Notes: generated by a model from the sequence alone, not told the origin. A stretch of DNA of 42,471 nt from Macrostomum lignano (GCA_002269645.1 NIVC01003509.1:1-42471), one strand, 5' to 3'; shown: positions 5,881 to 25,064, numbered from the stretch's first letter. Numbers and translations are program-made.

Positions 5881-6198
5881 TCACTGGAAGGAGATGCCGC
5901 TGCTGCCGCCGCCGCCGCCGCCGCTCTCCCTGGCGATGCGGCTGCCGTACACTTTGCTGACGATGTTCCAGGTCTCCACGTACCTGTCCAGGCACATGCT
6001 CACGCACTTCTGCTCGGAGGTGGCCAGCTCCCCGCCGGGGCTGGGCACGCACTTCTCGAAGCACTTCTCCGTGGAGGTGTTCACCAGCGACTGGATGAGG
6101 TTCAGCGCCGTCTGCTGCTGAAGCTGTTCAAGGATTTGGCGCTTATCGGAGTCCGACCCGCCGCCACCGCCGACACCGCTGGAGCTGAGGCTGTCCAT
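5881..6198 (-). CDS. TIMM13: Mitochondrial import inner membrane translocase subunit Tim13 (small Tim chaperone), single exon, 105 aa
   Basis: Twin CX3C motif (CFEKC...CVSMC). TEKCFEKCVPSPGGELATSEQKCVSMCLDRYVETWNIVSKVYGSRIARE closely parallels remembered human TIMM13 ([49 protein letters not shown]). Minus-strand AATAAA at 5708-5713. Confidence 0.93.
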   Translation of the reverse strand: MDSLSSSGVGGGGGSDSDKRQILEQLQQQTALNLIQSLVNTSTEKCFEKCVPSPGGELATSEQKCVSMCLDRYVETWNIVSKVYGSRIARESGGGGGGSSGISFQ

Positions 6199-6264
6199 GC
6201 TGGCTGGGGAGCTGCGGGGGTCCGTTGCAATTTGAGCTGGGGAATTGAGACTTTCGGAGCGAAT

Positions 6265-6790
6265 GCCGAAGTAGCAAGTAAATTGGGGTTGGCGGGGATG
6301 ACCAGGGAGAGTAAATTGGGTTTATGGGGGTAGTGATGGAGAGTGTACAATCTGGTTTATGGGGGTGGTGAAGATGTACTTGGGGTTGGCCATGGAGAGT
6401 GTACATGGGGTTGATGAGGATAGCCAGGAAGAGTGTACATTAGGTACGGGGTGGTAAAAGAGAGTGTACATTAGGGTTGGCGGGGCCGGTTTCCAGGGAG
6501 TGTATATTGGGCTGGCGAGGATGGCCAGGGAGACTGTACATTGGGTTCGCGGATATGGCAAGGGAGACTGTACATTGGGTTGGCGGGGATGGCAAGGGAG
6601 ACTGTACATTGGGTTGGCGGGGTTGGCCATAGAGAGTGTACATTGGATTGGCGGGGATAGCCAGGGAGAGTGCACATTGGGTTAACGGGGATGGAAAGGG
6701 AGGGTGTACATTGGGGTTGGTGGGAATAGCCAGGGAGAGTGTATATTGAGTTGGCGGGGCCGGTGGCCAGGGAGTGTATATTGGGTTGGC
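6265..6790. repeat. Degenerate G-rich ~35-bp minisatellite (gggagagtgtacattgggttggcggggatggcca)
   Basis: Recurring gagtgtacattggg core; immediately upstream of the TIMM13 acceptor. Confidence 0.9.
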
Positions 6791-7001
6791 TAATAAATAA
6801 ACAAGCGCAGACACCAGAAGTCCAGTCGGCCCGGGAGAGGACCATTTTATTTTCTTTAATCGGCAGCAAAAACGGCAGAATTCCCGGCGCGAGCACACGG
6901 AAGGCGCGGACGCAAACAAGGAGAGGCTGAGATGCGCGCCTTGTTTTAGCCTCATGGACACAACAGACGGAACACAAAATATAGCAGGCCAACAGCAAAG
7001 A

Positions 7002-7007
7002 TTTATT
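7002..7007 (-). promoter_or_regulatory. Candidate polyadenylation signal for EIF3J
   Basis: Minus-strand AATAAA followed by a GU-rich tract (tattttgtgttccgtctgttgtgt). A second AATAAA lies at 6846-6851. Confidence 0.4.
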
Positions 7008-7632
7008 ATCAAACAAAAAAATAAACTAACACAGGTCACAGACAGGCTGGCGGAGGCCAAGATCGACAATAAATGTACTTAAATAAGATCGTCAGAATAA
7101 CAAAGGTAAGCAGAACTCATTAGATGCCAAAACCGGAGAATGGGAGAAGGGCGCGCGCGCATTTCTAAGCCAGCCGAAACTCTGACTCCCGAATGCACAC
7201 CTGGGCAATTAAGCGGACACTTAACCTGCTCACGGAATTGGAAGATGCAAAGCCGACAGCTCCATATAACAATGAACTGATAAGCAATGTTTAAGCCGCA
7301 AAATAGCACAAAATAGCAATTACAGGGTGGCTACTGGGCAGTTCAAAGGGGCAAATCGCGAAATAAGAATTCAGCTAATAAAGGGCTTGATAACAGCTTC
7401 TGGATAGATGCATTATCATATGCTAAATAGAATGAGCTGATGTTTAAACTGGATCTCATCAAATACAGGGACTCAGGATTCCGAACTTCTCAGGCGCGAA
7501 TTAAGTAGGAGAAAAAACTGCAAAACTGTACTAGCAAAACTTGACAAGAATAAAAATTCTGCAAAAATATAGTCAACTACTTCAGGCTTCCCTAAATCTC
7601 AAACTGCAGATCTGAAAATCTTCGGGTTCGTA

Positions 7633-8165
7633 GGAAATCCCCAGTTGACAAGGGAAATTCTCAACAGAAAGAGGAATCCCCAGTTGACAAGGGAAATTCC
7701 TGACGGAAAGAGGAATCCCCAGTTGCCAAGGTAAACCCTCAGTTGTCACAGGAAATCCCTTTCGGCAAAGGGAATCCCCCTGTTTCCAAGGGAAATCATT
7801 TTCGGCAAGGAAAATCCCCAGTTGTCAAAGGAAATTCCTGACGGAAAGAGGAATCCCCAGATATCAAGGGAAAACCCAGCTGCCAAGGAAAACCTTCAGT
7901 TGCCACGGGAAATCCTTTTCGGACAGGGGAATCCCTAGTTGGAAAGGGCATTCCCCAGTTTCCAAGGGAAATCCCTCCTCAGTTGTCAAGGGAAATCTCT
8001 GTCGGCAAGGGGAAACCCAATTTGGCAAGGAAAATCCACAGTTGCTAAGGGAAATCTCAAGTCAGCAAGGGAATTTCCAAGGAAATTGATTCTTGAGTGT
8101 TTGACTAAAAAACCCCAGTGCTGGCGCGAAATCCTCAGTCGACAAAGGAAATCCCCAGTTGCTAT
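7633..8165. repeat. Degenerate minisatellite (aagggaaatccccagttg core) downstream of the EIF3J stop
   Basis: Recurring ggaaatcccc/cagttg motifs. Confidence 0.85.
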
Positions 8166-8202
8166 GCAAAAGGGACTCGGCACAAGCGGAGAGATCAGGG
8201 GG

Positions 8203-8973
8203 TCACATAAAGTCGTCAAAGTCGTCATAATCGTCGTAGCCCTCGCCGTCGAGAGCCGCCGGGTCCCGCTCGACCTTCACAGTGCCCTTGGCCTTCTTCG
8301 GCTTGCCCTTAGCCGTCTTTTGCATTTTTTGTTTCTCAGTCGCCAGCGCGCCAAAAGAAGTGGAGAGGCGGCGCAGGCACTCGGGGTCCAGCTCGAGCGC
8401 GCACTCCCTGTAGACGCCTTCAATGAATCCCGGGTAGTGCGGCGAGGTCTCCAGGCTGCGCAGCTTCTGGGAGAGCAGCCGGGCCAGCTTGTCGAAGTCC
8501 TCCTTGCCGCTCGGCTGCAGCAGGTCGATTGACTTCTCCGGGATGATGCCAGCAGCCGCAGCTGCTTCGTTGACCCCGAAGGTGTCCTTGGTGATGAGCA
8601 GGTCGGACTCCTCCTGCAGCTTGCGCAGCTCCTCCGCTGTCAGGTTCTTGGCGGCGGCTCCGCCCGCCTCCGCTGAGTCCGGAGCGCTCTGCTTTTTTCG
8701 CTCTTCGACTTCGGTTTTCTTCTTCTCCAGCGCCTCGGCCAGCGCTTTTTTGCCCTTCTTCGGCTTCGTGGAGGTCGCGGCGGCGGCCGGCTTCTTGTCG
8801 GCTAAGGCGGCGGAGGCAGCCGCGGGCGCGGCCGGCTCGGCGTCCCAGGCGTCGGGCACCTCGTCCTCGTCTTCGCCCTCCCACTTGTCCGTCTTCGGCG
8901 GCACCGACAGCGGAATCAGCGAGGGCCCGCCGGCCTCCAGGGTTTCGGCTTCGTCCTCCCAGGTGTCGGCCAT
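8203..8973 (-). CDS. EIF3J: Eukaryotic translation initiation factor 3 subunit J, single exon, 256 aa (start MADTWEDE)
   Basis: Acidic N-terminus with DKWEGEDEDEVPDAWD, then LRKLQEESDL, P-x-x-KEDFDKLARLL, HYPGFIE, a Lys-rich tail and the terminal YDDYDDFDDFM, all typical of eIF3j. ATG at 8973 preferred over 9015 because the in-between sequence is a pyrimidine tract plus CAG acceptor. Confidence 0.95.
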   Translation of the reverse strand: MADTWEDEAETLEAGGPSLIPLSVPPKTDKWEGEDEDEVPDAWDAEPAAPAAASAALADKKPAAAATSTKPKKGKKALAEALEKKKTEVEERKKQSAPDSAEAGGAAAKNLTAEELRKLQEESDLLITKDTFGVNEAAAAAGIIPEKSIDLLQPSGKEDFDKLARLLSQKLRSLETSPHYPGFIEGVYRECALELDPECLRRLSTSFGALATEKQKMQKTAKGKPKKAKGTVKVERDPAALDGEGYDDYDDFDDFM

Positions 8974-9137
8974 GCGAACTGCAGCTGGTGCGGCTGCGGG
9001 GTCGGGGGGAGGCATAATTTGTCTACCTGCTTTGGGAGTTACCGGCAGCCTCTATGACTTTCCTATAGATAATTTAGGGATACTAAACAAAAGAGATCTT
9101 AAAGCAGGGCTTGAAATGCCAACTCTCGTAAAAAGTC

Positions 9138-9373
9138 ACTGACAGTCAAGTGTCACCGACAGTCAAGTGTCACCGATAGTCAAATGTCACTGACAGTCAA
9201 ATGTCACTGACATTCAAGTGTTACTGACAGTCAAATGTCACTGACAGTCAAGTGTTACTGACAGTCAAATGTCACTGACAGTCAAATGTCACTGACAGTC
9301 AAATGTCACTGACATTCAAGTGTTACTGACAGTCAAATGTCACTGACAGTCAAGTGTTACTGACAGTCAAATG
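9138..9373. repeat. 17-bp minisatellite (actgacagtcaaatgtc)
   Basis: About 14 copies between MRPL38 and EIF3J. Confidence 0.95.
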
Positions 9374-9734
9374 ACGGTATCCTGGTTTGTTTGATCAATC
9401 TCTAATTACTTAACTAACCGAATACTCCAGCCAGCTATTTATCGGACAGAGATGTACTTTGAAATGAAACGACAAGCAGAGACGACAAGCAGTTAAAGGC
9501 TCAACAGCAAAGCTGCAGGTGAGCACACGTGTATTTCCAGTCAATGAGCCTCAGGTTGAGTTCATGACAATGGAAGCGAATATTTTTAGTATTTGAAACT
9601 CTACAGCACAGTGAATTGCTGGTATGCATGTGGCTAAAACACTGGACAAAATGCCATCTTCTACGCTGCATCGCAACTTATACTGCTGGACAAAGCAATG
9701 AGTAGTCAGCAAAGGATTTTTATAAAGAATTTTG

Positions 9735-9942
9735 CTAATCGAGGTCGCGCCACTGCCCTTGGCGCAGAATCTTCTGAGCCTCTCGCTCCTTCAGCCAGCT
9801 GGGCTGGTAGCCCTCGGCCGGCACCGCCAGGGGATACTTGGACTCCGGCCTGCGGCGGCCCAGGAACGGGTGCACTGACTTCAGCTTCTCCTTCAGGGTC
9901 TCCTCGGCGATGTCCTTGGTGTCCCGGTACTTGTCCAGGTAG
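9735..9942 (-). CDS. MRPL38: MRPL38 exon 4 of 4 (68 aa plus TAG); not in the supplied ORF track
   Basis: Acceptor cccgcccag|C TAC completes ...EPFNL-YLDKYRD..., ending WLKEREAQKILRQGQWRDLD*. Phase matches exon 3. Whole protein is 434 aa. Confidence 0.9.
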
Positions 9943-10004
9943 CTGGGCGGGTGGAGTGGGATGACCAGGTATAGCTAGGAAATAATGTACATCTAGTGAG
10001 ATTC

Positions 10005-11665
10005 AATGAGAAATGAGGTGGATCAAATGAGACATGAGATGCATCTAATGAGACATGAGGTGGATCTAATGAGACATGAGGTGCATCCAAAGAGATATGA
10101 GATGCATCCAATGAGACATGAGGTGAATCTAATGAGACATGAGGTGCATCCAAAGAGATATGAGATGCATCCAATGAGACATGAGGTGGATCAAATGAGA
10201 CATGAGGTGCATCCAAAGAGATATGAGATGCATCCAATGAGACATGAGGTGAATCTAATGAGACATGAGGTGCATCCAAAGAGATATGAGATGCATCCAA
10301 TGAGACATGTGTAGTGAGTATTCCTCTCCCAGCCGTTTAAAGGACGCATGGTCCTTCCCGTGTTGTTTATTTACGTGTACTTTCTCGCGCGTACCGGTGA
10401 AAACCGGCCCACCAATATGTCTATCTCTGCTATCGTTGGGGTTTGGGTGAGCCTGGGTGCAGTCAGTTTTTGGGCTTAGCTGGGGGAGTCGCGCTGTTTG
10501 TTTGGGCCGTGGCGCCGGCTGATTGGCTGAGCCCACCCCTCCTTTGCGCTGGTTGGGGGGTTGGCCTCTCTTAGCTGCATGTGTGGCTACCCTCTGCCCC
10601 ACCCCGCTCCGCCGGTCTATTTAGGTGAGCCCCCTGCTGAGTTGTTTTTAGTTAAGTGTTGTGGCCCGTCTCGACTTGCGGCCCCACCGGCTTTTGCTAC
10701 TGAATTTGCGCTACGTTTCCAATAGCGACAACCTATTTCTGTGCTGTGCTCTGTTCGTGTACGAGCCCCTGTTCTCTGCGACCCTGCGCTCTTTTCCTGT
10801 GCGACCCCGAGCATTCGTTCTCTGCGCTTCTGCCTGCGTTTCAAACTGCGCTGAAATAGACTGCGCACCACCGAAACCGTGAGACCTTTTGCCGTGTTGT
10901 TCTTTGGGGTTAGCTGCTTAGGCTCTAGGCGGGATTGGAGCGTCGTACGCGTGCTGGGGGCAATTGGGCTGCTCAAACCGCCTGCTTTTCCCTCCCGACT
11001 CCGCGTCGTACGCGAGTGGGTGGGCGACCGCAGTGAGGGTCAGAACACGAGCCCGAACTCCGGGAGAAACGACCCGGATCCCCCCCGTGTCACCACACAT
11101 GAGATGCATCCAACAAGACATGAGATGCATCCAATGAGACATGAGGTGAATCTAATGAGACATGAGGTGCATCCAAAGAGATATGAGATCCATCCAATGA
11201 GACATGAGGTGAATCTAATGAGACATGAGGTGAATCTAATGAGACATGAGGTGAATCTAATGAGACATGAGTTGGATCAAATGAGACATGAGTTGGATCA
11301 AATGAGACATGAGTTGGATCAAATGAGACATGAGGTGAATCTAATGAGACATGAGTTGGATCAAATGAGACATGAGGTGAATCTAATGAGACATGAGTTG
11401 GATCAAATGATACATGAGGTGAATCTAATGAGACATGAGGTGGATCAAATGAGACATGAGGTGGATCAAATGAGACATGAGGTGGATCAAATGAGACATG
11501 AGGTGGATCAAATGAGACATGAGGTGGATCAAATGAGACATGAGGTGGATCAAATGAGACATGAGGTGGATCAAATGAGACATGAGGTGGATCAAATGAG
11601 ACATGAGGTGGATCAAATGAGACATGAGGTGGATCAAATGAGACATGAGGTGGATCAAATGAGAC
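10005..11665. repeat. 21-bp minisatellite (atgagacatgaggtggatcaa) in MRPL38 intron 3, split by the solo LTR
   Basis: Arrays 10005-10309 and 11098-11665; source of the MRHEVDQ pseudo-ORFs. Confidence 0.95.
10310..11097. mobile_element. Solo LTR (788 bp) of an LTR retrotransposon, inserted in MRPL38 intron 3
   Basis: Termini TGTAGTG...CACCACA (TG..CA, 6/7 inverted). Flanked by a 4-bp TSD CATG (10306-10309 and 11098-11101). Removing it restores the satellite unit atgagacatgagatgcatcc. Minus-strand AATAAA at 10366-10371. Confidence 0.88.
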
Positions 11666-11693
11666 GAGATCTCTCAATCCCCAGGGTGCTCAC

Positions 11694-12238
11694 AGATTGA
11701 AGGGCTCGGAAAAGGCGAACTGCTGCATCTTCGGTCTGTAGGGCGCCGGCCAGCGGAACTCGAAGACGGGCTCGGCGCCCATGTCGGTCAGCCGATGCCG
11801 GTAGACGGTCCGCACCGACGGGTCCCAGGCGGCCTGGAAGAAGCAGAGGCCGGCCGGGGTCAGCCGGTCCTGGTGGCGCCGGTAGAACTCAGCGGTGCTG
11901 AAGTCGCGCTCAGCCAGTCGGTCTCCGGCCAGCTGTTGGTTCTCCTGCTGGTCCTCCAGAGGCGCGGACTGCACGAAGAGCACCAGCGCGTAGCGGTGCA
12001 GGCCGGTGCCCAGCGGCGGGATTGGCTGCAGGTAGGGGAGGCGGACGCGGCCCTCCGCCACGCGGCCGCTGCCGGGGATGTCGGTGACCAGCCAGTGCGC
12101 GTACTCGCGCTCCGCCGACTGCAGGTGCTCATCGGGACAGGTGAGCAGCACCGCCCACTTCAGCTGCTGCTGCTGACCAGAGCTGCTGCTGTTGAAATCC
12201 TGCGGCTCCTGCCAGCGCAGGTCTGGGGCCTCGGAACA
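11694..12238 (-). CDS. MRPL38: MRPL38 exon 3 of 4 (PEBP-like domain)
   Basis: Acceptor caattccag|TGT, donor CT|GTGAGC (phase 2). Contains EYAHWLVTDIPG, YLQPIPPLGTGLHRY, LTPAGLCFFQAAWD, EPVFEF: a PEBP fold with mL38-specific motifs. Confidence 0.95.
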
Positions 12239-12267
12239 CTGGAATTGCGGGACAGCGGAGATTTTGG

Positions 12268-13212
12268 CTGGGATCTGGGAGGGCTGCTATCCCAGTTTGG
12301 GATCTGGGAGGGTTGCTATCCCAGTTGGGATCTGGGAGGGCTGCTATTCCAGTTTGGGATCTGGGAGGGTTGCTATCCCAGTAAGGGAATCTGGGAGGGT
12401 TGCTATCCCAGTAAGGGAATCTGGGAGGGTTGCTATCCCAGTAAGGGAATCTGGGAGGGTTGCTATCCCAGTAAGGGAATCTGGGAGGGTTGCTATCCCA
12501 GTAAGGGAATCTGGGAGGGTTGCTATCCCAGTAAGGGAATCTGGGAGGGTTGCTATCCCAGTTGGGGATCTGGGAGGGTTGCTATCCCAGTTTGGGATCT
12601 GGGAGGGTTGCTATCCCAGTAAGGGAATCTGGGAGGGTTGCTATCCCAGTAAGGGAATCTGGGAGGGTTGCTATCCCAGTAAGGGAATCTGGGAGGGTTG
12701 CTATCCCAGTTGGGGATCTGGGAGGGTTGCTATCCCAGTTTGGGATCTGGGAGGGTTGCTATCCCAGTAAGGGAATCTGGGAGGGTTGCTATCCCAGTAA
12801 GGGAATCTGGGAGGGTTGCTATCCCAGTAAGGGAATCTGGGAGGGTTGCTATCCCAGTAAGGGAATCTGGGAGGGTTGCTATCCCAGTAAGGGAATCTGG
12901 GAGGGTTGCTATCCCAGTTGGGGATCTGGGAGGGTTGCTATCCCAGTTTGGGATCTGGGAGGGTTGCTATCCCAGTAAGGGAATCTGGGAGGGTTGCTAT
13001 CCCAGTAAGGGAATCTGGGAGGGTTGCTATCCCAGTAAGGGAATCTGGGAGGGTTGCTATCCCAGTAAGGGAATCTGGGAGGGTTGCTATCCCAGTTGGG
13101 GATCTGGGAGGGTTGCTATCCCAGTTTGGGATCTGGGAGGGTTGCTATCCCAGTTTGGGATCTGGGAGGGTTGCTATCCCAGTTGGGGATCTGGGAGGGT
13201 TGCTACCCCAGT
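12268..13212. repeat. 29/30-bp minisatellite (gggaatctgggagggttgctatcccagtaa) in MRPL38 intron 2
   Basis: Period 30 visible line-to-line; runs of 30-mers punctuated by pairs of 29-mers. Confidence 0.97.
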
Positions 13213-13754
13213 CTGAGATCTGAGTTAGATTCTCTAAGTCGAAGAGGGGATAAGGAGGCGCCATAACCGAAGGCAGTCATCAGATTGAATGTGCTCAGCA
13301 GTCAACTGCAGCCTAGCAACTAAAAACAAATAGTCAAGAAGCTGCAATCGCTAAGGCGCAAATTACATCATCACGTGACCGAGTTCTTATAGAACAATGA
13401 GTGCTGGATACTGCATCAGACAGACTGAATCAGCAGTCACTTGCGCACGTTTTTACGACGAGTTAGGCGCTCGTCCGTCGCGCAAGGCTAAGGCGCAAAT
13501 TACGTCATCACGAGCAGCGAAACAGCACTATCTAGCTACAGTGTGATAATATCCCAACTGATTGACTACTGAGAGTACTATAAAATAGATAATAGGTGAT
13601 ATATAAGCCAGGCACTGCGGTCAGACAGATTCTGTCAGCAGTCACTCGCGCACGTTTTTTAAAACGAGTTAGGCGCTCGTCCGTCACGCGAGGCTAAGGC
13701 GCAAATTACGTCATCACGCGCAGAGGCTGGCGAAGAAGACTATCGTACGCGATC

Positions 13755-14305
13755 TTGCATTCAAGATTTGCAGATTTGAATGCAAGATCCCGACAAAGAC
13801 CAGATCTGAATTGTAACATCCCGACAAAGACCAGATCTGAATTGTAACATCCCGACAAAGACCAGATCTGAATTGTAACATCCCGACAAAGACCAGATCT
13901 CAATGCAAGATCCCAACAAAGACCAGATCTGAATTGTAACATCCCGACAAAGACCAGATCTGAATTGTAACATCCCGACAAAGACCAGATCTGAATTGTA
14001 ACATCCCGACAAAGACCAGATCTGAATTGTAAGATCGCGACAAAGACCAGATCTGAATTGTAACATCCCGACAAAGACCAGATCTGAATTGTAACATCCC
14101 GACAAAGACCAGATCTGAATTGTAAGATCGCGACAAAGACCAGATCTGAATTGTAACATCCCGACAAAGACCAGATCTGAATTGTAACATCCCGACAACG
14201 ACCAGATCTGAATTGTAAGATCGCGACAAAGACCAGATCTGAATGCAAGATCCCGACAAAGACTAGATCTCAATGCAAGATCCCAACAAAGACCAGATCT
14301 TATCC
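13755..14305. repeat. 31-bp minisatellite (ccgacaaagaccagatctgaattgtaacatc) in MRPL38 intron 2
   Basis: About 17 copies. Confidence 0.96.
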
Positions 14306-14470
14306 CAACAGGATCTTGCCATTCTACCAGAAAATGACACGACAGAGCAGCCATCAGACAGATTTTACTCAGCATCGATCAGCTCCAGTTATAAGGAAGC
14401 TGGCTAAGGCGCAAATTACGTCATCAGTTGGACTGCTCTATAAAAATGAGACAGTATGGGGAAATCTCAC

Positions 14471-15426: not shown

Positions 15427-15497
15427 CTGGGTGGCTGTGGGCATGCAGTACATGCTCTCGCATTGGTATTTGCGAGCGATACCAGAACTACAATGTG

Positions 15498-16564: not shown

Positions 16565-17392
16565 GGGAATTGGAGGGCGATTCTTCAGGAATTGGAGGGC
16601 GATTCTTCAGGAATTGGAGGGCGATTCTTCAGGAATTAGAGGGCGATTTTTCAGGAATCGGATGGCGATTCTTCAGGAATCGGAGGGCGATTCTTCAGGA
16701 ATTGAAGGGAGATTCTACAGGAATGGGAGGGCGATTCTTCAGGAATTGGAGGGCGATTTTTCAGGAATTGGAGGGAGATTCTTCAGGAATTGGAGAGCGA
16801 TTCTTCAGGAATTGGAGGGCGATTTTTCAGGAATCGGAGGGCGATTTTTCAGGAATTGGAGGGCGATTTTTCAGGAATCGGAGGGCGATTCTTCAGGAAT
16901 TGGAGAGCGATTCTTCAGGAATTGAAGGGAGATTCTACAGGAATGGGAGGGCGATTCTTCAGGAATCGGAGGGCGATTCTTCAGGAATTAGAGGGCGATT
17001 TTTCAGGAATCGGAGGGCGATTCTTCAGGAATTGGAGGGCGATTCTTCAGGAATCGGAGGGCGATTTTTCAGGAATTGGAGGGCGATTTTTCAGGAATCG
17101 GAGGGCGATTCTTCAGGAATCGGAGGGCGATTTTTCAGGAATTGGAGGGAGATTCTTCAGGAATTGGAGAGCGATTCTTCAGGAATTGGAGGGCGATTTT
17201 TCAGGAATCGGAGGGCGATTCTTCAGGAATTGGAGAGCGATTCTTCAGGAATCGGAGGGCGATTCTTCAGGAATTGAAGGGAGATTCTACAGGAATGGGA
17301 GGGCGATTCTTCAGGAATCGGAGGGCGATTCTTGAGGGATTGGAGGGCGATTCTTCTGGAATCGGAGGGCGATTCTTCAGGAATCGGAGGGC
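16565..17392. repeat. 22-bp minisatellite (gaattggagggcgattcttcag)
   Basis: About 37 copies. Confidence 0.96.
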
Positions 17393-17981
17393 GGAAGGCC
17401 AAATGTAGTCCAGAGCTGGGAATGACGGCAGCAGCTCAAGAGAACAATTCTCAGACAACCTGAAGCCCCAGTTTCTTGTCACCCAGCCAATAATTAAGTA
17501 AATTGTTGCCATCCGCCTGTCTCAGAGCTGCTCACAATTATGAATAAAACTAGATTAAGACTAAGGCGAAAAGTTGATGGAAAAAAGTACAATAAAAACT
17601 GTCCGAAGTATGCAACTGGCAAGGTGAGCCAACGTGTTACAGACTGCATAGCAACAAGAAAGCTGTTCCTCAAAAAGCTTGTGACTTAGGAGTGAAACGT
17701 AGCATGAGGGGGCGGAGGGTGGGCCAAAGCACGGCAAGCAGCACTGCAAACAGACAGCCAGCCACTCTGCTGTCACCTGCACCGAAATCAGCGAGTCATC
17801 TAATTTTAATAATAAATAATTAGATGATATAAAGTTTTTGGCTGCCAATCGCCTGGTGGACCAAATCTCACCGCGAAATCTTACTAGTAGATAAATTAAT
17901 AAGATCTTTAACCCGAACTCTGATCGCTAGGTTCAAACAACTCTAATCAGAAATCTCACGCTAGATTTTAAATCTACCCCT

Positions 17982-19150
17982 ATCACCCCTAGATCTGACA
18001 CCTCTAATCTCACCCCTAGATCTGACACCTAATCTCACCCCTAGATCTGACACCTCTAATCTCACCCCTAGATCTGACACCTCCAATCTCACCCCTAGAT
18101 CTGACACCTCCAATCTCACCCCTAGATCTGACACCTCTAATCTCACCCCTAGATCTGACACCTCTAATCTCACCCCTAGATCTGACACCTCTAATCTCAC
18201 CCCTAGATCTGACACCTAATCTCACCCCTAGATCTGACACCTCTAATCTCACCCCTAGATCTGACACCTCTAATGTCACCCCTAGATCTGATACATCTAA
18301 CCTCACCCCTAGATCTGACACCTCTAATCTCACCCCTAGATCTGACACCTCTAATGTCACCCCTAGATCTGACACCTCTAATGTCACCCCTAGATCTGAC
18401 ACCTCTAATCTCACCCCTAGATCTGACACCTCTAATCTCACCCCTAGATCTGACACCTAATCTCACCCCTAGATCTGACACCTCTAATCTCACCCCTAGA
18501 TCTGACACCTAATCTCACCCCTAGATCTGACACCTCTAATCTCACCCCTAGATCTGACACCTCTAATGTCACGGTCACCCCTAGATCTGATACATCTAAC
18601 CTCACCCCTAGATCTGACACCTCTAATCTCACCCCTAGATCTGACACCTCCAATCTCACCCCTAGATCTGACACCTCTAATGTCACCCCTAGATCTGATA
18701 CATCTAACCTCACCCCTAGATCTGACACCTCCAATCTCACCCCTAGATCTGACACCTCTAATGTCACCCCTAGATCTGACACCTCTAATCTCACCCCTAG
18801 ATCTGACACCTCTAATGTCACCCCTAGATCTGACACCTCTAATCTCACCCCTAGATCTGACACCTAATCTCACCCCTAGATCTGACACCTCTAATCTCAC
18901 CCCTAGATCTGACACCTAATCTCACCCCTAGATCTGACACCTCTAATCTCACCCCTAGATCTGACACCTAATCTCACCCCTAGATCTGACACCTCTAATG
19001 TCACGGTCACCCCTAGATCTGATACATCTAACCTCACCCCTAGATCTGACACCTCTAATCTCACCCCTAGATCTGACACCTCTAATGTCACCCCTAGATC
19101 TGACACCTCTAATCTCACCCCTAGATCTGACACCTCTAGTCTCTCCTAGA
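17982..19150. repeat. 27-bp minisatellite (cacccctagatctgacacctctaatct) with 25-bp variants
   Basis: About 43 copies just downstream of the DNAJC22 stop. Confidence 0.97.
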
Positions 19151-19314
19151 TCTGACATCTCAAACCCGAAACCTGGCCCCTAATCCTAAAATCTCTAATC
19201 CGAAAACTTCTACACGGTGGATTATGGCCCAGACAGGTGGTCAGGAGCCGCAGCAGTTTCAGCCATACAATTTGACTGCCCTGGCTGACACAGTCACAAA
19301 GCCAGACAGGCGCA

Positions 19315-19506
19315 TCACGTCTCCTTCCGGCTGGCCCGCTTCCGACCCAGCAGGATGTCGCAGGCGGCGCTGACATCCTGGAACTTGGCCTGGAATTCCG
19401 CTTTTTTGTCCGGGTCCTGTTGCCGGTCCGGGTGCAGCTCCACCTTCAGCTTGCGGCAGCGGGACCGAATCTCGTCCGGGCCGGCGCCCTCTTTGATGCC
19501 AATTAT
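19315..19506 (-). CDS. DNAJC22: DNAJC22 exon 4 of 4 (J domain, HPD motif); reading frame not in the supplied ORF track
   Basis: Acceptor ttcccgcag|ATA, phase 0. IIGIKEGAGPDEIRSRCRKLKVELHPDRQQDPDKKAEFQAKFQDVSAACDILLGRKRASRKET*. Whole protein is 390 aa. Confidence 0.92.
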   Translation of the reverse strand: MIGIKEGAGPDEIRSRCRKLKVELHPDRQQDPDKKAEFQAKFQDVSAACDILLGRKRASRKET

Positions 19507-19664
19507 CTGCGGGAATTTTATTGTTCATAAGATATGCTGATGCCAACAAACTACTGCAAGTAGAAGTATGGAGCATGAATTTTATTTCAATTTTCTATGC
19601 GGTTCATGGAGCGATTGAAAGTCAGGTGGGATTCAGGGCGGTTTTCTCACGTGGAGATTATTAA

Positions 19665-19975
19665 TGGGGATTTCAGGGCGATTCTGTCATGGGGAGATTA
19701 TCGATGGGGATTTCAGGGCGATTCTGTCATGAGGAGATTATCGATGGGATTTCAGGGCGATTATCATGTGAATCCAGGGCGATTGTCACGGGGAGATAAT
19801 CGATGGGATTTCAGAACGATTCTGTCACGGATAGTTTATCAAAGGGGATTTCAGGGCGATTGTCACGGGGAGATAATCGATGGGGAATTCAGGGCGATTC
19901 TGTCATGGGGAGATTATCGATGGGGATTTCAGGGCGATTGTCACGGGGAGATTATCGATAGGATTCGGGGCGACT
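19665..19975. repeat. ~38-40-bp degenerate minisatellite (ggggatttcagggcgattgtcacggggagattatcgat) in DNAJC22 intron 3
   Basis: About 8 copies. Confidence 0.9.
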
Positions 19976-20015
19976 CTACAGTGGCCCAGTTTCTAGAGCC
20001 AGTATATGCTCTTAC

Positions 20016-20476
20016 ACTGGCGGCATCTTTTAATCCCTGCGGATCCAGGGCGTCCCACAGCTGCTTGAGAATCTCCTTGAAGCCGTGAATCTTGTAATAC
20101 TCGTACAGCTTGCCCACCGTGTCGCGCATCTCCCGCCAGAGCGGCGATTTAAAGAAATTCCTGACGGCCTCGCGCAGCGGCACGGACTCGCCTTCGTAGG
20201 TGACGCGGGCGTTGTTGAGCAGGCTGAAGGCCAGCAGCGAGTAGAACAGACAGGCGCCGAGGCTCACCGCGCAGGCGCGGCCGCAGCGCGACTTCGGCTT
20301 GGCTGGCCGGCTGCGCCAGTCGCGGCAGAACCAGTTGGCCAGGGAGACAGTGAGCAGTGAGCCGTAAAGGATGTTGTTGAAGTCAGTTGAGTAGACAACG
20401 AATGAGCAGTACGAGCAGATGGCCAGCTTCGTGAAGGACATTTGATGAACACCGATGTTGCCAACTAGGTACACGC
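20016..20476 (-). CDS. DNAJC22: DNAJC22 exon 3 of 4
   Basis: Acceptor ctacccag|GC, donor AGT|GTAAGA. Contains GVYLVGNIG, VPLREAVRNFFKSPLW and LWDALDPQG, characteristic of wurst/DNAJC22 in invertebrates. Confidence 0.92.
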
Positions 20477-20491
20477 CTGGGTAGTGGGTGG

Positions 20492-20856
20492 ATAGTGGGT
20501 ATGGTAGAGGGCGGATAGAGGGTATGGCGGGGGGCGGATAGAGGGTATGGCAGGGGGCGGATAAGGCGGATAGTATCTATAGGTATGGTAGGGGGCGGAT
20601 AGTAGGTATGGTAGGGGGCGGATAGTAGGTATGGTAGGGGCGGATAGTAGGTATGGTAGGGGCGGATAGTAGGTATGGTAGGGGCGGATAGTAGGTATGG
20701 TAGGGGCGGATAGTAGGTATGGTAGGGGCGGATAGTAGGTATGGTAGGGGGCGGATAGTAGGTATGGTAGGGGCGGATAGTAGGTATGGTAGGGGCGGAT
20801 AGTAGGTATGGTAGGGGCGGATAGTAGGTATGGTAGGGGCGGATAGTAGGTATGGT
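20492..20856. repeat. 22-bp G-rich minisatellite (ggggcggatagtaggtatggta) in DNAJC22 intron 2
   Basis: About 16 copies abutting the exon 3 acceptor. Confidence 0.96.
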
Positions 20857-21495
20857 AAAGTACACATAGAACTTGTGGCAAAGAACAAATAGGTGAAACT
20901 GGATGATATTATATCAGACTTGGTCAGCGCACTTTCTGTTGCTAGGGGGGGGGGGAGATTTCTACATCCTGAATTGCTTTTATCTCGTCAAGAAAGTAGA
21001 AAGCCATCAAAGCAGTGCAACAAATGAACAACCCTGTGGTCAGGAAATTGACACAAGAAGGCCATTAAGTGCATAAAAATAAAAGCACTACAAGAGCGTC
21101 AGTCTCCGGAAGTTAGAAGAATCGAGCAGATTGCCAGGTACAAGGCACAAATGAAAACAGTCAAACAAGCCCGAGCGACAGGTGTGGGGAATTACTGAGC
21201 CAGACACATTGTGAGTGCACATGTAGCAAGGTGATGGGCTCTGCTTTAGGCGAAAAAACAATAAATTTACACAAAAGCAAACTGTTTACCGCATACCAAT
21301 AGCCATTGCCAAAGGTGACAATAATTCAATCACGAAGCGAACCTCCTCGACCGTCAATGCCAACTCATCCGATTCTAAAAGTAAATTGTCAATCACGAGA
21401 GGTTAAATCATGGACAGTTGCCGATATTTGAGCTGCACATCACGCAAAATTTCCGATTAATCACGAAAGCAAAAATACAAGCTATATTAAACAGA

Positions 21496-22040
21496 TCCCC
21501 GCATTCCCATCTGGCACCAATCGGATTCCCATCTGACACCAATTAGATTCCCATCTGACACCACTCGGATTCCCATCTGACACCCATCGGATTCCCATCT
21601 GACACCAATTAGATTCCCATCTGGCACCAATCGGATTCCTATCTGACACCAATTGGATTCCCATCTGACACCACTCGGATTCCCATCTGACACCACTCGG
21701 ATATTCCCATCTGACACCCATCGGATTCCCATCTGACACCCATCGGATTCCCATCTGACACTCATCGGATTCCCATCTGGCACCCATCGGATTCCCATCT
21801 GACACCCATCGGATTCCCATCTGGCACCAATCAGATTCCCATCTGGCACCCATCGGATCCCCATCTGACACTCATCGGATTCCTATCTGACACCCATCGG
21901 ATTCCCATCTGACACAAATTTGATTCCTATCTGACACCCATCGGATTCCCATCTGACACCAATCGGATTCCCATCTGACACCTATCGGATTCCCATCTGA
22001 CACCCATCGGATTCCTATCTGACATATATAATTGGATTCC
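21496..22040. repeat. 22-bp minisatellite (ggattcccatctgacaccaatc) in DNAJC22 intron 2
   Basis: About 24 copies. Confidence 0.95.
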
Positions 22041-22557
22041 AGCAAACAGCAACAGAATTTAATTGGTTTCCAAGTTCGCCCAAGCAGACGAGCATCAATA
22101 GGTTACCTATTTTCCCCAATGAGTTTTGCCTTCCCCAGCCTCCCATTGCGGGCAGGATAAGCTCCGCAGCTTAAGAAAATAGCAAGAAAATCGCTCCGGG
22201 CCGCTGAGGAACCCCAAAGGATCGCCAGGCCGCAGCCTTGCAGCTGTCGGCGGTAAAAGTGCGCGCAGGCCAAGACCAGCGCGTGCGGGCGAAAGTTGCG
22301 GCCATAAATAAATACAGAGCAATAAATTATCCGGGCAAAGCCAGTTACAGGATGCGGCCCGCAATCTCCGCGTGGGAAATCAGCTGGGAAGTCGCGGCCT
22401 AAATGGGACCGAAAGTGCAATTCGGACTTGAAAAGATCAAACGATCCGGCAGTTCGGAATCGAATAGATCAATTTTTTGTATGCAGTTCAAAAGTACATG
22501 CCAGCTACTGGATGATGGAGAGCCGCAAGTGCCAAACAGAACTCAAAGCTGACTCAC

Positions 22558-22680
22558 CCAGAGCAATGGGCAGCGGCCAGGTGAGGCGGATCAGCTGTTT
22601 GCGATTGTCGTCATCGAACCATTCGGTTGGGAAGGCGCCGAGCCACAGCATGGCGCAGGTCAGGCCGAACAGGATCTCAC
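22558..22680 (-). CDS. DNAJC22: DNAJC22 exon 2 of 4 (123 nt); not in the supplied ORF track
   Basis: Acceptor catctcag|GT, donor CTGG|GTGAGT, phase 1-1. Translates GEILFGLTCAMLWLGAFPTEWFDDDNRKQLIRLTWPLPIAL, continuing the hydrophobic segments expected before (G)VYLVGNIG. Confidence 0.85.
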
Positions 22681-23003
22681 CTGAGATGATGGGGCGGGAA
22701 TCTGTGCATCTGGGAACTTCTGATTGACTGCTGCCTGTGATTAAAGCCAGCCTCCCTCCTCATCAGCTTATAATTTTCACTTGTAAATCTTAATATTCAC
22801 CAGCAGCTGGTTTCTCGCATTTGTTTTATTGTTTACACAGACCACTTAAAAACTTTTAATACATTATCAACAGGAAAGGTACACGGGTGGGAGTGGGCGA
22901 TGATGGGAGCAGCTGGAAACTGGGAGATCTGCCACTTGGATGAAGAAAACAGGTTTGCCTGCTGGCTGGGAACAGCGGCGAGCTCCAGACTGGCTTTCTG
23001 GGG

Positions 23004-23487
23004 GTGAATTTCAGGGGTGAGACTGGTTTCAATGTAGTGAATCCCAGGGGTGAGATTGGTTTCAATGTAATGAATCTCAGGGTTGAGGCTAGTTTCAATG
23101 TAATAAATCCCAGGGGTGAGATTGGTTTCAATGTAATGAATCTCAGGGGTGAGACTGGTTTCAATGTAGTGAATCCCAGGGGTGAGATTGGTTTCAATGT
23201 AATGAATCTCAGGGTTGAGGCTAGTTTCAATGTAATAAATCCCAGGGGTGAGACTGGTTTCAATGTAGTGAATCCCAGGGGTGAGATTGGTTTCAATGTA
23301 ATGAATCTCAGGGTTGAGGCTAGTTTCAATGTAATAAATCCCAGGGGTGAGACTGGTTTCAATGTAGTGAATCCCAGGGGTGAGATTGGTTTCAATGTAA
23401 TGAATCTCAGGGTTGAGGCTAGTTTCAATGTAATAAATCCCAGGGGTGAGACTGGTTTCAATGTAGTGAATCCCAGGGGTGAGATTG
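23004..23487. repeat. 33-bp minisatellite organised as a 99-bp three-subunit higher-order repeat, DNAJC22 intron 1
   Basis: Subunits gagactggtttc/gagattggtttc/gaggctagtttc recur in a fixed order; 33-aa periodicity in the pseudo-ORFs. Confidence 0.95.
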
Positions 23488-23959
23488 GCCTTCAAGGACA
23501 ATCTGAACGATATGCTGGTTAATATACTGAATATCCATAAAGCAATTTAGCGCAGCAAAACTGCATTGGGCAAGTTTTTTGCAAAGCAGAAAGCAAGCAA
23601 TGTATTGCGTCGCGCGGGACAAGAGAGAATAAACGCTATTAAAGACAAAAATACGAACTGCGCATGGTAAACCGGGATACAGGGAAGGCACAGGGGGATT
23701 GGGTTGCCACACAGCGATCTGTGATCTGCAATGGCCAGCGCCTGAAGCTCTGATTCTCATCACACTAAAATATAGATTTATTACCTGCAGATAAGCCATT
23801 TGCGCTGTGGAATATCCTCTATGGGTTTTTAGGGAAGTTCAGTGGACAGCCTGATGGATCTGGGAAAGACAGAATAGTAGGGAGCCGATAGCAGATTTGT
23901 AAGGTGGTGGGTGGATAGTAGAAGATTACATATGTAGAGGAAGAGGGACGGTAGAGGAT

Positions 23960-24537
23960 GGCTGGGGTGATAAAGGGTGGTAGGGGCGGATGGTAGGGGG
24001 CAGTAAGGGCGGATGGTAGGGGGAAGTATGGGCGGATGGTAGGGGGAAGTAGGGGATGGCAGGGGCAGATGGTAGGGGGAAGTAGGGGATGGCAGGGGCG
24101 GATGGTAGGGGATGGCAGGGGCGGATGGTAGGGGATGGCAGGGGCGGATGGTAGGGGATGGCAGGGCGGATTGTAGGGGATGGCAGGGGCGGATTGTAGG
24201 GGATGGCAGGGGCGGATTGTAGGGGATGGCAGGGGCGGATTGTAGGGATGGCAGGGGCGGATTGTAGGGGATGGCAGGGGCGGATTGTAGGGGATGGCAG
24301 GGGCGGATGGTAGGGGATGGCAGGGGCGGATGGTAGGGGATGGCAGGGGCGGATGGTAGGGGATGGCAGGGGCGGATGGTAGGGGATGGCAGGGGCGGAT
24401 GGTAGGGGATGGCAGGGGCGGATTGTAGGGGCGGCAGGGGCGGATTGTAGGGGCGGCAGGGGCGGATTGTAGGGGCGGCAGGGGCGGATGGTAGGGGATG
24501 GCAGGGGCGGATTGTAGGGGGCGGCAGGGGCGGATGT
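23960..24537. repeat. 23-bp G-rich minisatellite (ggggcggatggtaggggatggca) in DNAJC22 intron 1
   Basis: About 24 copies starting ~60 nt after the exon 1 donor. Confidence 0.96.
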
Positions 24538-24595
24538 GCATCCTAGTGGCAATAGACGCATGTGGCGGAAGTCCATCAGCGGCAGAGCAGCTCAC

Positions 24596-24992
24596 CGAAA
24601 TACCTGGACCAGCTGCACCTGGGCGCCTTGTCTCGCAGCTTGTCCCGGAAAAATATGGACCCGGCCAGGCGCCGCTTCAAGGCTTCGTAGTCGTCGCGCA
24701 GCCGGCCGCGGTCCTGCGTCTCCGGTTGGCCGGGCGCAGGCGCTGACTGCAGGATCTGCTGCACCGAGGTGAACCTGCTCAGGTCGGCCTGGTACTCCTC
24801 GGTCAGAAACTGGTCCTCAGACTCCCGGATGTAGCGCTCTAGGTTGAACAGGTCGTGCAGCCAGCCGGCGAAGAAGCCGCCAAGGCTGCACAGCATCACG
24901 AAGCCGTGCAGACTGCGGCCGAGATAAAACTGGTGCGCGCCGAGCAGGCCGAGGGTGAACAGCAGAATGTAGGCAATTGTGCGGGACGCCAT
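24596..24992 (-). CDS. DNAJC22: DnaJ homolog subfamily C member 22 (wurst-like; TM2 domain plus C-terminal J domain), exon 1 of 4
   Basis: MASRTIAYILLFTLGLLGAHQFYLGRSLHGFVMLCSLGGFFAGWLHDLF is a TM2-domain signature (GxHxFYLG...GxxW). Donor TTCG|GTGAGC, phase 1. Confidence 0.92.
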
Positions 24993-25064
24993 GGCTGATT
25001 CGCTTCTCTGCTTTGGGCAACTGCCTGCTGCAAGTTTGGTGGAAGTGGACATCTTGATAATTGG

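What the first reader, a model, noticed from the sequence alone, without database searches (positions are those of the whole stretch)
5881..25010. Candidate SL trans-spliced eukaryotic operon: DNAJC22 > MRPL38 > EIF3J > TIMM13
Seen: four unrelated conserved genes, all on the minus strand, head-to-tail, with stop-to-start gaps of about 3.9 kb, 0.76 kb and 2.0 kb that are largely minisatellite. Each ATG has a C-rich YAG acceptor just upstream: TIMM13 ccccgcag| (AG at 6212-6213, 13 nt before ATG), EIF3J ccccgcag| (8994-8995), MRPL38 cccacag| (15435-15436, 8 nt), DNAJC22 cccaaagcag| (25008-25009, 15 nt). CCCAAAGCAG also recurs upstream of EIF3J (9027-9036). I found no convincing upstream donor or exon for any of them. 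Known: flatworms use spliced-leader trans-splicing, and animal operons are enriched for mitochondrial, translation and chaperone housekeeping genes. Inferred: this is one polycistronic unit resolved by polyadenylation plus SL addition, with satellite-filled intercistronic spacers.
Basis: partly seen in the sequence, partly recalled or inferred. Interest (0 to 1): 0.75.

Follow-up and report, generated by a model that had tools for sequence, protein, structure and literature searches.

The report
Flatworm trans-spliced gene cluster, already annotated
This is a stretch of the flatworm Macrostomum lignano genome in which four same-strand housekeeping genes start at spliced-leader-type acceptor sites; at least two of them are already recorded as one polycistronic transcription unit, so it is an ordinary example of a published feature of this species.

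Summary
The window is Macrostomum lignano scaffold NIVC01003509.1 (assembly Mlig_3_7). The four genes are real: DNAJC22, mL38/MRPL38, eIF3j and Tim13. All lie on the minus strand, head to tail, with stop-to-ATG gaps of 3888, 761 and 2004 nt. These gaps are 61%, 32% and 46% tandem repeat.

However, a YAG within 20 nt upstream of an ATG occurs at 38-75% of random ATGs in this window, so it is not evidence on its own.

Better evidence comes from the deposited annotation:
- The 5'-partial CDSs of TIMM13, EIF3J and DNAJC22 begin within about 1 nt of an AG acceptor, in several near-identical genome copies.
EIF3J uses CTGCAG|/CACCAG|, and DNAJC22 uses TTGCAG|CAG|.
- MRPL38 and EIF3J share the locus prefix Mlig010225. 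In the authors' naming scheme this means they were cut from one assembled transcriptional unit.
- TIMM13 and DNAJC22 carry other prefixes.

Repeat-inflated spliced-leader operons are already published for this species (about 15% of genes). I could not inspect any reads.

The core is an MRPL38>EIF3J operon, TIMM13 is a likely member, and DNAJC22 is uncertain. Novelty and interest are low.

The parts
19315..25025 (-). DNAJC22 gene (TM2 + DnaJ domains). CDS exons: 25025-24596 (ATG at 24992), 22680-22558, 21374-21297, 20476-20016, 19506-19315.
   Evidence: These exons reproduce NCBI protein PAA51074.1 (P0026, 427 aa, 5' partial) exactly. Without the 78-nt exon they give UniRef A0A1I8GQ27, 'DnaJ homolog subfamily C member 22'. 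Pfam finds TM2 and DnaJ.
25025..25029 (-). Tandem acceptors cTTGCAG|CAG| at the annotated 5' end of DNAJC22 mRNA (AG at 25029-25028 and 25026-25025).
Evidence: The 5'-partial CDS starts at 25025, reading 'GSCPKQRSESAM'. TTGCAG fits the published trans-splice motif [T/C]TNCAG. Copy L006 has TTGCTG yet the same annotated start, which points to the CAG| at 25026-25025.
15427..19314 (-). Spacer between DNAJC22 stop and MRPL38 ATG: 3888 nt, of which 2361 nt is tandem repeat (27-mer x44, 22-mer x38, 27-mer x11) and 1527 nt is not.
   Evidence: There is no AATAAA or ATTAAA within 1.5 kb after the stop; the first are at 17810, 16331 and 16183. The spacer contains a 156-nt palindrome at 15568-15723.
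9735..15426 (-). MRPL38 (mL38) gene. CDS exons: 15426-15136, 14731-14471, 12238-11694, 9942-9735 (434 aa).
Evidence: Residues 2-434 equal NCBI PAA51073.1, BOX15_Mlig010225g9. Human mL38 chains match at E=2.6e-50. Annotated 5' ends are 15423-15425 (window, L004) or 15438-15440 (L003), and none abuts an AG.
8980..9734 (-). Spacer between MRPL38 stop and EIF3J 5' end: 755 nt, of which 243 nt is a 17-mer array and 512 nt is non-repeat.
   Evidence: There is no canonical poly(A) signal; a TATAAA lies 14 nt after the stop. The spacer lies inside the published transcriptional unit Mlig010225, inferred from shared gene names.
8979..8986 (-). EIF3J acceptor cluster caCCAG|ctGCAG| (AG at 8986-8985 and 8980-8979).
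Evidence: 5'-partial CDSs start directly after CTGCAG| in L002 and L003, after CACCAG| in L004, and 1 nt off in the window. CTGCAG fits [T/C]TNCAG.
8203..8973 (-). EIF3J CDS, single exon, 256 aa from ATG 8973.
   Evidence: Pfam eIF3_subunit at 2e-49. Homologues start at the equivalent Met. The NCBI models are P0001, P0010 and P0011.
6212..8202 (-). Spacer between EIF3J stop and TIMM13 acceptor: 1991 nt, of which 916 nt is tandem repeat and 1075 nt is not. Minus-strand AATAAA/ATTAAA lie at 7007, 6860 and 6851.
6212..6213 (-).
   Evidence: The 5'-partial CDS 'SPASMDSL...' starts at 6210, directly after this AG, in the four copies examined. The same AG serves as a cis-acceptor in an older chimeric gene model.
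5881..6198 (-). TIMM13 CDS, single exon, 105 aa.
   Evidence: Pfam zf-Tim10_DDP at 2.7e-21. The best PDB match is yeast Tim13. The copy of this gene in L004 is NCBI BOX15_Mlig019025g1 (PAA68494.1); the name of the window's own record is not shown.
5708..5713 (-). AATAAA 168 nt after the TIMM13 stop; likely poly(A) signal of the last gene.
   Evidence: This is inferred; no 3'-end reads were seen.

Best explanation
The locus is a co-oriented cluster of four housekeeping genes in Macrostomum lignano. Their mature mRNAs most likely receive the species' 35-nt spliced leader (SL) at AG acceptors a few nucleotides upstream of each start codon.

MRPL38 and EIF3J are transcribed as one precursor, which is resolved by 3'-end formation of MRPL38 and SL addition at CTGCAG|/CACCAG| in front of EIF3J. 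This pair is already recorded as transcriptional unit Mlig010225.

TIMM13 is probably a third cistron of the same unit. The RNA-seq-based unit was probably broken by the minisatellite-rich 2-kb spacer.

DNAJC22 is SL-type at its 5' end, but it may be a separate unit or an upstream cistron.

The minisatellites in the spacers are the same neutral repeat load that fills the introns.

Shown: gene identities, order, distances, and annotated 5' ends at acceptors.
Taken from published annotation: the shared unit name.
Inferred: TIMM13 membership, SL use at each site, and poly(A) sites.
For: - The organism and scaffold are identified.
- The published SL, the acceptor motif [T/C]TNCAG, the operon frequency and the repeat-inflated intergenic distances are all established for this species (PMC8629364).
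- MRPL38 and EIF3J proteins share the prefix Mlig010225, with paired g-numbers where both names are shown: g1/g2 in L004 and g3/g4 in L002.
- The authors assign one prefix per transcriptional-unit cluster and then cut units into genes at SL and poly(A) signals. [quoted passage not shown]
- Deposited 5'-partial CDSs begin at or within 1 nt of an AG for TIMM13 (the four copies examined), EIF3J (4 copies, two alternative AGs) and DNAJC22 (3 copies). Two of these AGs match the published 6-nt motif. That motif lies within 40 nt upstream of only 6-9% of random ATGs here.
- Upper bounds for the repeat-adjusted intergenic distance are 512 nt (MRPL38>EIF3J) and 1075 nt before subtracting any 3'UTR (EIF3J>TIMM13). 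The published operon threshold is 1 kb.
- An older independent gene model (UniParc UPI0007A2870F) fuses MRPL38, EIF3J and TIMM13 through GT-AG joins, and the second join uses the TIMM13 acceptor.
- No opposite-strand gene interrupts the cluster.
Against: - No SL-containing read, poly(A) read or spanning transcript could be inspected. SL use is inferred from where the annotation starts.
- A shared unit name could result from read-through or from assembly across adjacent genes rather than from an obligatory precursor.
- TIMM13 (Mlig019025) and DNAJC22 (Mlig012715/Mlig019715) have their own unit names.
- The annotated MRPL38 5' ends differ between copies and abut no AG. MRPL38 may therefore start at a conventional promoter.
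- No canonical AAUAAA follows the MRPL38 or DNAJC22 stop within 1.5 kb.
- The other genome copies are 94-99.5% identical to the window in the aligned stretches. Their shared gene order is not independent evolutionary evidence.
Confidence: 0.62

Rival explanations
1. One promoter upstream of DNAJC22 drives a single precursor of at least 19 kb covering DNAJC22>MRPL38>EIF3J>TIMM13. It may extend from the co-oriented PID-domain gene further upstream. All four mRNAs are released by polyadenylation plus spliced-leader (SL) addition.
For: - All four genes are co-oriented with nothing annotated on the other strand.
- DNAJC22 itself starts at an SL-type acceptor, so it has an outron or an upstream cistron.
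- The region upstream of DNAJC22 is about 90% satellite for 12 kb, leaving little unique sequence for a promoter.
- In copy L006 a same-strand 754-aa PID-domain gene ends about 7.9 kb upstream.
- If the DNAJC22 3' end lies near the AATAAA at 16183, the repeat-adjusted distance to MRPL38 falls to about 400 nt, under the 1-kb rule (my estimate).
- The published maximum operon size is nine genes.
Against: - DNAJC22 and MRPL38 carry different transcriptional-unit names.
- The stop-to-ATG non-repeat distance is 1527 nt, above the 1-kb rule unless more than 500 nt of it is 3'UTR.
- The MRPL38 annotated 5' end is not acceptor-exact.
- A palindromic element with CCAAT and CACGTG motifs lies 140-300 nt upstream of MRPL38 and could supply promoter activity.
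Confidence: 0.25
2. Four (or three) independent genes. Each has its own promoter in the spacer upstream of it and is SL trans-spliced as a monocistronic outron-containing transcript. The shared Mlig010225 unit reflects read-through or assembly merging.
For: - About 60% of SL trans-spliced genes in this species are not in operons.
- The spacers hold 512-1527 nt of non-repeat sequence, which is enough for a compact promoter.
- TIMM13 and DNAJC22 have their own unit names.
Against: - The published annotation keeps MRPL38 and EIF3J in one unit in all four copies.
- The 512-nt repeat-adjusted gap falls in the operon mode of the published bimodal distribution.
- An independent older gene model also fuses the genes.
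Confidence: 0.15
3. No trans-splicing here. The genes have conventional capped mRNAs with very short 5'UTRs, and the upstream AGs are coincidental.
For: - A YAG near an ATG is common by chance in this window, at 38-75% of ATGs.
- The annotated MRPL38 5' ends are not at an AG.
Against: - The annotated 5' ends of TIMM13, EIF3J and DNAJC22 fall exactly at AG| boundaries in multiple copies. Two of these match the 6-nt published motif.
- The annotation pipeline sets such boundaries from SL-read peaks.
- About 45% of human-conserved genes are SL trans-spliced in this species.
Confidence: 0.03

Closest known systems
Macrostomum lignano SL trans-spliced operons and transcriptional units (Wudarski et al. 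2017, PMC5730564; Ustyantsev & Berezikov 2021, PMC8629364)
   Same: - Same species and same genome assembly.
- Co-oriented conserved housekeeping genes.
- Downstream genes begin at AG acceptors, some matching [T/C]TNCAG.
- Intergenic spacers are inflated by tandem repeats but short once repeats are subtracted.
- MRPL38 and EIF3J already carry one transcriptional-unit prefix.
   Different: - Nothing differs in kind.
- Four-gene membership (DNAJC22, TIMM13) is not shown by the names I could see.
- The DNAJC22>MRPL38 spacer may exceed the published 1-kb repeat-adjusted cut-off.
Caenorhabditis elegans SL2-type operons
   Same: - Polycistronic precursor.
- 3'-end formation of the upstream gene is coupled to spliced-leader addition on the downstream gene.
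- Enriched for housekeeping, mitochondrial and translation genes (my background knowledge).
- After repeat subtraction the typical M. lignano spacing is also about 100 nt.
   Different: - M. lignano has a single SL and no specialised SL2.
- Raw spacers here are 0.76-3.9 kb because of minisatellites, against about 100 nt in C. elegans.
Parasitic flatworm polycistrons (e.g. the trematode cytochrome b-c1 subunit 7-enolase pair; PMC12582326)
   Same: - Flatworm SL ending in AUG (for parasitic flatworms such as S. mansoni this is my background knowledge; for M. lignano).
- SL acceptors are also usable as cis-acceptors.
- Chimeric gene models arise from polycistronic precursors, as with UniParc UPI0007A2870F here.
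   Different: - Candidate operons there are defined by intergenic distances of 300 bp or less.
- This gene combination is not mentioned there.
- Synteny with parasitic flatworms could not be tested.

Membership tests
SL trans-spliced operon, criteria of Ustyantsev & Berezikov 2021 for M. lignano | Immediately adjacent genes, same orientation, no opposite-strand transcript between them. | tested here: met
   All four genes are on the minus strand, in order. The deposited annotation lists no other protein gene between them. Non-coding transcripts were not visible to me.
SL trans-spliced operon, criteria of Ustyantsev & Berezikov 2021 for M. lignano | The downstream gene is SL trans-spliced (SL-containing reads at its 5' end). 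| tested here: inconclusive
   No reads were accessible. Indirect evidence: 5'-partial deposited CDSs start at or within 1 nt of AG| for EIF3J, TIMM13 and DNAJC22 in several copies. The annotation pipeline defines such ends from SL-read peaks. MRPL38 ends do not abut an AG.
SL trans-spliced operon, criteria of Ustyantsev & Berezikov 2021 for M. lignano | Repeat-subtracted intergenic distance below 1 kb. | tested here: inconclusive
   Upper bounds (stop to 5' end, minus TRF repeats):
- MRPL38>EIF3J 512 nt: met.
- EIF3J>TIMM13 1075 nt before removing the 3'UTR: met if the 3'UTR has more than 75 non-repeat nt.
- DNAJC22>MRPL38 1527 nt: depends on an unknown poly(A) site.
Sources. RepeatMasker repeats, which the authors also subtract, were not available.
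SL trans-spliced operon (general definition) | A precursor RNA spanning two or more cistrons. | tested here: inconclusive
   For MRPL38+EIF3J this is implied by the shared transcriptional-unit prefix Mlig010225. For the other two junctions there is no such evidence. The chimeric model UPI0007A2870F may be ab initio. No RNA data were inspected.
SL trans-spliced operon (general definition) | A single promoter; no internal promoters driving downstream cistrons. | not testable with these tools
   Needs RAMPAGE/CAGE, chromatin marks or reporter transgenes.
DNAJC22 (Wurst) family | N-terminal TM2 domain, multi-pass membrane region and C-terminal J domain. | tested here: met
   Pfam TM2 (1.5e-11) at residues 14-60 and DnaJ (5e-8) at 365-418 of PAA51074.1. 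UniRef names the 390-aa isoform DNAJC22.
Mitoribosomal protein mL38 (MRPL38) | PEBP-fold protein homologous along its length to mL38 of solved mitoribosomes. | tested here: met
   phmmer gives 2.6e-50 to human mL38 (6nu2_6, 3j7y_6) over about 260 residues, far better than cytosolic PEBPs at 1e-17 or weaker. Pfam finds PBP.
eIF3 subunit j | Full-length match to the eIF3j family profile. | tested here: met
   PF08597 at 2e-49, covering profile positions 2-250 of 250. Named eIF3j homologues match at 33-39% identity.
Small Tim protein Tim13 | Twin CX3C Tim10/DDP fold, closest to Tim13 rather than Tim8, Tim9 or Tim10. | tested here: met
   PF02953 at 2.7e-21. PDB E-values: yeast Tim13 2.7e-12, Tim10 5.6e-6, Tim8 3.3e-5, Tim9 4e-3.

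The most novel reading that the evidence does not exclude
All four genes, perhaps together with the co-oriented PID-domain gene upstream, are cistrons of one very long precursor of 19 kb or more. It could exceed 36 kb if the 12-kb satellite block upstream of DNAJC22 is an outron or spacer. RNA polymerase II would then read through kilobase-scale minisatellite arrays between cistrons, and 3'-end cleavage would be uncoupled from termination over distances 10-40 times longer than in nematode operons.
Probability: 0.2. Interest if true: 0.4.

Novelty: already known. Interest (0 to 1): 0.15.

Why it matters
It matters little beyond bookkeeping. Spliced-leader (SL) trans-splicing, operons covering about 15% of genes, and repeat-inflated operon spacers are published for M. 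lignano, and the deposited annotation already treats MRPL38 and EIF3J as two genes of one transcriptional unit.

The locus is a clean worked example for three practical points:
- A YAG next to an ATG is not evidence of an SL acceptor without read support.
- RNA-seq-based units break at minisatellite spacers, so operon size is probably underestimated.
- Anyone choosing a 'promoter' for EIF3J or TIMM13 transgenes in this model should not simply take the upstream 2 kb.

Tried and rejected
- **Rfam and tRNA scans of the window:** nothing found, and no spliced-leader (SL) RNA gene. The 35-nt SL is absent from the window even with 3 mismatches.
- **SL-bearing transcripts in the protein/contig collection:** the clusters of all four proteins contain only M. 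lignano genome-derived or UniRef/UniParc entries and no transcriptome contigs. A direct test was therefore not possible.
- **Synteny in other flatworms:** The eIF3j search returned nothing closer than 39% identity outside M. lignano.
- **Paralogous copies as comparative evidence:** rejected as independent support, because the other copies are 94-99.5% identical to the window in the aligned stretches, including the satellites. They were still useful for single-base changes at acceptors.
- **Gene identifiers in paper supplements:** not present in the files held.
- **Blind enumeration of MRPL38 exon chains:** gave spurious paths through repeats. It was resolved only with splice-consensus filters and an exact database match.
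- **Poly(A)-signal scan:** uninformative for DNAJC22 and MRPL38, which have no canonical hexamer.
- **The 15568-15723 palindrome as a dispersed repeat:** it has no other copy in the window.
- **Candidate ORFs at 38.9-40.6 kb and 3.0-4.8 kb:** no Pfam hits.

Full report
**Identity of the window**

The eIF3j ORF belongs to a 90%-identity cluster. Its other members are GenBank proteins PAA51077.1/PAA86573.1 (BOX15_Mlig010225g3) and PAA68495.1 (BOX15_Mlig010225g2) of Macrostomum lignano. An exact look-up places the window's own protein on NIVC01003509.1, a 42,471-bp scaffold of assembly GCA_002269645.1 (Mlig_3_7).

Three further copies of the locus exist, on NIVC01000273.1, NIVC01003508.1 and NIVC01001391.1. 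In the stretches aligned to the window they are 94-99.5% identical, satellites included. This fits the known partial genome duplication of the sequenced line (PMC8629364). Their shared gene order is not independent evidence.

**The genes**

Pfam identifies four domains:
- Tim10/DDP at 5881-6198.
- eIF3_subunit at 8203-9015.
- PBP at 11690-12151.
- TM2 at 24576-25052.

I built exon models and checked them by exact database look-up.

*DNAJC22.* The exons are 25025-24596, 22680-22558, 21374-21297, 20476-20016 and 19506-19315. They reproduce PAA51074.1, which is 427 aa with TM2 + DnaJ domains. Without the 78-nt exon they give UniRef A0A1I8GQ27, 'DnaJ homolog subfamily C member 22'.

*MRPL38.* The exons are 15426-15136, 14731-14471, 12238-11694 and 9942-9735. 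Residues 2-434 equal PAA51073.1. The protein matches human mL38 chains at 2.6e-50.

*EIF3J.* It is a single exon, 8973-8203. Its homologues start at the same methionine.

*TIMM13.* It is a single exon, 6198-5881. It is closest to yeast Tim13 among solved small Tims.

**Gaps and repeats**

TRF repeats cover 61%, 32% and 46% of them. The introns carry the same load, at 38-69%, and the whole window is 52% tandem repeat. The satellites are therefore a property of all non-coding DNA here, not a special feature of the spacers.

**The acceptor observation**

However, each ATG has 4-9 AGs in the 60 nt upstream. A YAG within 20 nt upstream is found at 38% (plus strand) to 75% (minus strand) of all ATGs in the window. 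The observation alone carries no weight.

**What the literature says about this species**

M. lignano has one 35-nt spliced leader (SL), CGGTCTCTTACTGCGAAGACTCAATTTATTGCATG. [quoted passage not shown] About 15% of genes are assigned to operons. [quoted passage not shown] The authors conclude that repeats inflate operon spacers and use a 1-kb repeat-adjusted threshold (PMC8629364).

The genome paper describes the annotation procedure (PMC5730564):
- Transcripts were assembled into 'transcriptional units', which were often precursor RNAs with several trans-splice sites.
- Units were clustered at 95% identity and each cluster was given one name prefix.
- Units were then cut into genes at SL-read and poly(A)-read peaks.

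**What the deposited annotation implies for this locus**

*Shared unit name.* MRPL38 proteins are BOX15_Mlig010225g9 (window), g7, g1 and g4. EIF3J proteins are BOX15_Mlig010225g3 and g2. Where both names are shown the g-numbers are paired: g1/g2 in L004 and g3/g4 in L002. Two unrelated proteins can share a prefix only if they were cut from one transcriptional unit. The MRPL38>EIF3J pair is therefore already recorded as polycistronic.

TIMM13 carries the prefix Mlig019025g1 in copy L004, and DNAJC22 is Mlig012715g1/Mlig019715g2. Both are separate units. The 2021 paper warns that such units tend to split in repeat-rich operon spacers.

*5' ends.* The deposited CDSs are 5'-partial, so their first codon marks the mRNA 5' end to within 2 nt.
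- TIMM13 starts directly after ccccgcAG| (6213-6212) in the four copies examined.
- EIF3J starts directly after CTGCAG| (8980-8979) in two copies, after CACCAG| (8986-8985) in L004, and 1 nt off in the window.
- DNAJC22 starts at 25025, at the tandem acceptors cTTGCAG|CAG|. In L006 TTGCAG is mutated to TTGCTG yet the start is unchanged.
- MRPL38 is the exception. Its starts are 15423-15425 (window, L004) or 15438-15440 (L003), and neither abuts an AG.

CTGCAG and TTGCAG match the published motif. That motif lies within 40 nt upstream of only 6-9% of random ATGs here.

One possible explanation for the MRPL38 start is as follows. The SL ends in AUG and may be joined at ACCCAG|ATG (15428-15427), giving ...GCAUGAUG. 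The second ATG could then have been trimmed as SL suffix. This fits the start at 15423 but is speculation. Alternatively, MRPL38 is the non-trans-spliced first gene of its unit, as in 18% of published operons.

**Distances under the published rule**

From stop codon to annotated 5' end, minus TRF repeats, the distances are:
- MRPL38>EIF3J: 512 nt.
- EIF3J>TIMM13: 1075 nt.
- DNAJC22>MRPL38: 1527 nt.

These are upper bounds because the 3'UTRs and any transposon-derived repeats still have to be subtracted. The first pair passes. The second passes with any 3'UTR above 75 non-repeat nt; minus-strand AATAAA/ATTAAA lie at 7007, 6860 and 6851. The third depends on where DNAJC22 ends. There is no canonical signal within 1.5 kb, and the candidates are at 17810, 16331 and 16183.

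**Other supporting and complicating observations**

A 604-aa UniParc entry (UPI0007A2870F) comes from an M. lignano gene set other than the GenBank annotation; I assume it is the older one. It is a chimera of MRPL38 exons 3-4, EIF3J and TIMM13. I reproduced it with GT-AG joins at 9753-9023 and 8206-6212, and the latter uses the TIMM13 acceptor. Such chimeras are typical of polycistronic loci (PMC12582326), but this one may be purely ab initio.

Upstream of DNAJC22 lie 12 kb that are about 90% satellite. In copy L006 a co-oriented 754-aa PID-domain gene ends about 7.9 kb upstream. In the window it would lie at or beyond the 42-kb end.

A 156-nt palindrome at 15568-15723 has 63-nt arms and folds at -123 kcal/mol, with z = -17. 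It interrupts the 27-mer array and is flanked by TAGGATCA on both sides. It looks like a foldback or MITE insertion. It carries two CCAAT boxes and GTCACGTGAC, so promoter activity upstream of MRPL38 cannot be excluded.

**Conclusion**

It is well supported for MRPL38>EIF3J, plausible for TIMM13 and open for DNAJC22. Nothing here departs from what is published for this organism, and the core of the unit is already in the deposited annotation. No SL-containing read or spanning RNA was examined.

Noticed in passing
window 15568-15723: A 156-nt near-perfect palindrome with 63-nt arms that are 92% complementary and a 30-nt loop. As RNA it folds at -123 kcal/mol, z = -17. It interrupts the 27-mer minisatellite, is flanked by TAGGATCA on both sides, and carries two CCAAT boxes and a central GTCACGTGAC. 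It looks like a foldback or MITE insertion, lies 140-300 nt upstream of the MRPL38 start, and has only one copy in the window.
   Followed up: partly
window 8332 (EIF3J), and the equivalent position in L002 and L003: The deposited EIF3J CDSs in three of four genome copies stop without a stop codon at ...ATEK, just before GAGAAACAAAAAATGCAAAAG, although the ORF continues to 8203. Only the L004 model is complete. This looks like a false poly(A) cut from internal priming on an A-rich stretch.
   Followed up: partly
window 25024-25029; L006 about 9989-10001: DNAJC22 has tandem NAGNAG-type acceptors, TTGCAG|CAG|. In copy L006 the first AG is mutated to TG while the annotated 5' end is unchanged.
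   Followed up: yes
window 9027-9036 and 25008-25017: CCCAAAGCAG occurs exactly twice in the window, both on the minus strand: 53 nt upstream of the EIF3J ATG and 15 nt upstream of the DNAJC22 ATG. The chance expectation is 0.13, and 1 of 100 shuffles reached 2 matches. Neither copy coincides with an annotated 5' end. Unexplained.
   Followed up: partly
window 5881-12238 (UniParc UPI0007A2870F, P0018): A chimeric 604-aa gene model from an M. lignano gene set other than the GenBank annotation fuses MRPL38 exons 3-4, EIF3J and TIMM13. It uses cryptic donors at 9753 (GTGGCG) and 8206 (GTGACC, overlapping the EIF3J stop) and acceptors at 9023 and 6212.
   Followed up: yes
window 6211, 8978/8984, 25024/25027, 15426: The spliced leader ends in AUG. 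At the TIMM13, EIF3J and DNAJC22 acceptors this AUG is out of frame and would open overlapping 21-44-codon upstream ORFs. At ACCCAG|ATG of MRPL38 it would sit in frame directly next to the genomic ATG.
   Followed up: partly
window 25049-36907 and throughout: Tandem repeats cover 52% of the window. Examples are a 40-mer x195 at 98% identity (29139-36907) and a 34-mer x84 (25350-28169). Arrays in different introns and spacers appear related from their consensus units, for example GGGCGGAT(A/G)G units at 20480-20857 and 23978-24536, and ...AGGGCGATTCT... units at 16566-17393 and 19628-19977.
   Followed up: no
window 21297-21374: A 78-nt exon (ESDELALTVEEVRFVIELLSPLAMAI) is present in the GenBank DNAJC22 model but absent from the UniRef 390-aa model. 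It is a possible alternative cassette exon.
   Followed up: partly
L006 1-2054 (NIVC01001391.1); window beyond about 41.9 kb: A co-oriented 754-aa PID-domain gene ends about 7.9 kb upstream of DNAJC22 in another copy of the locus. The co-directional cluster may therefore be longer than four genes.
   Followed up: partly
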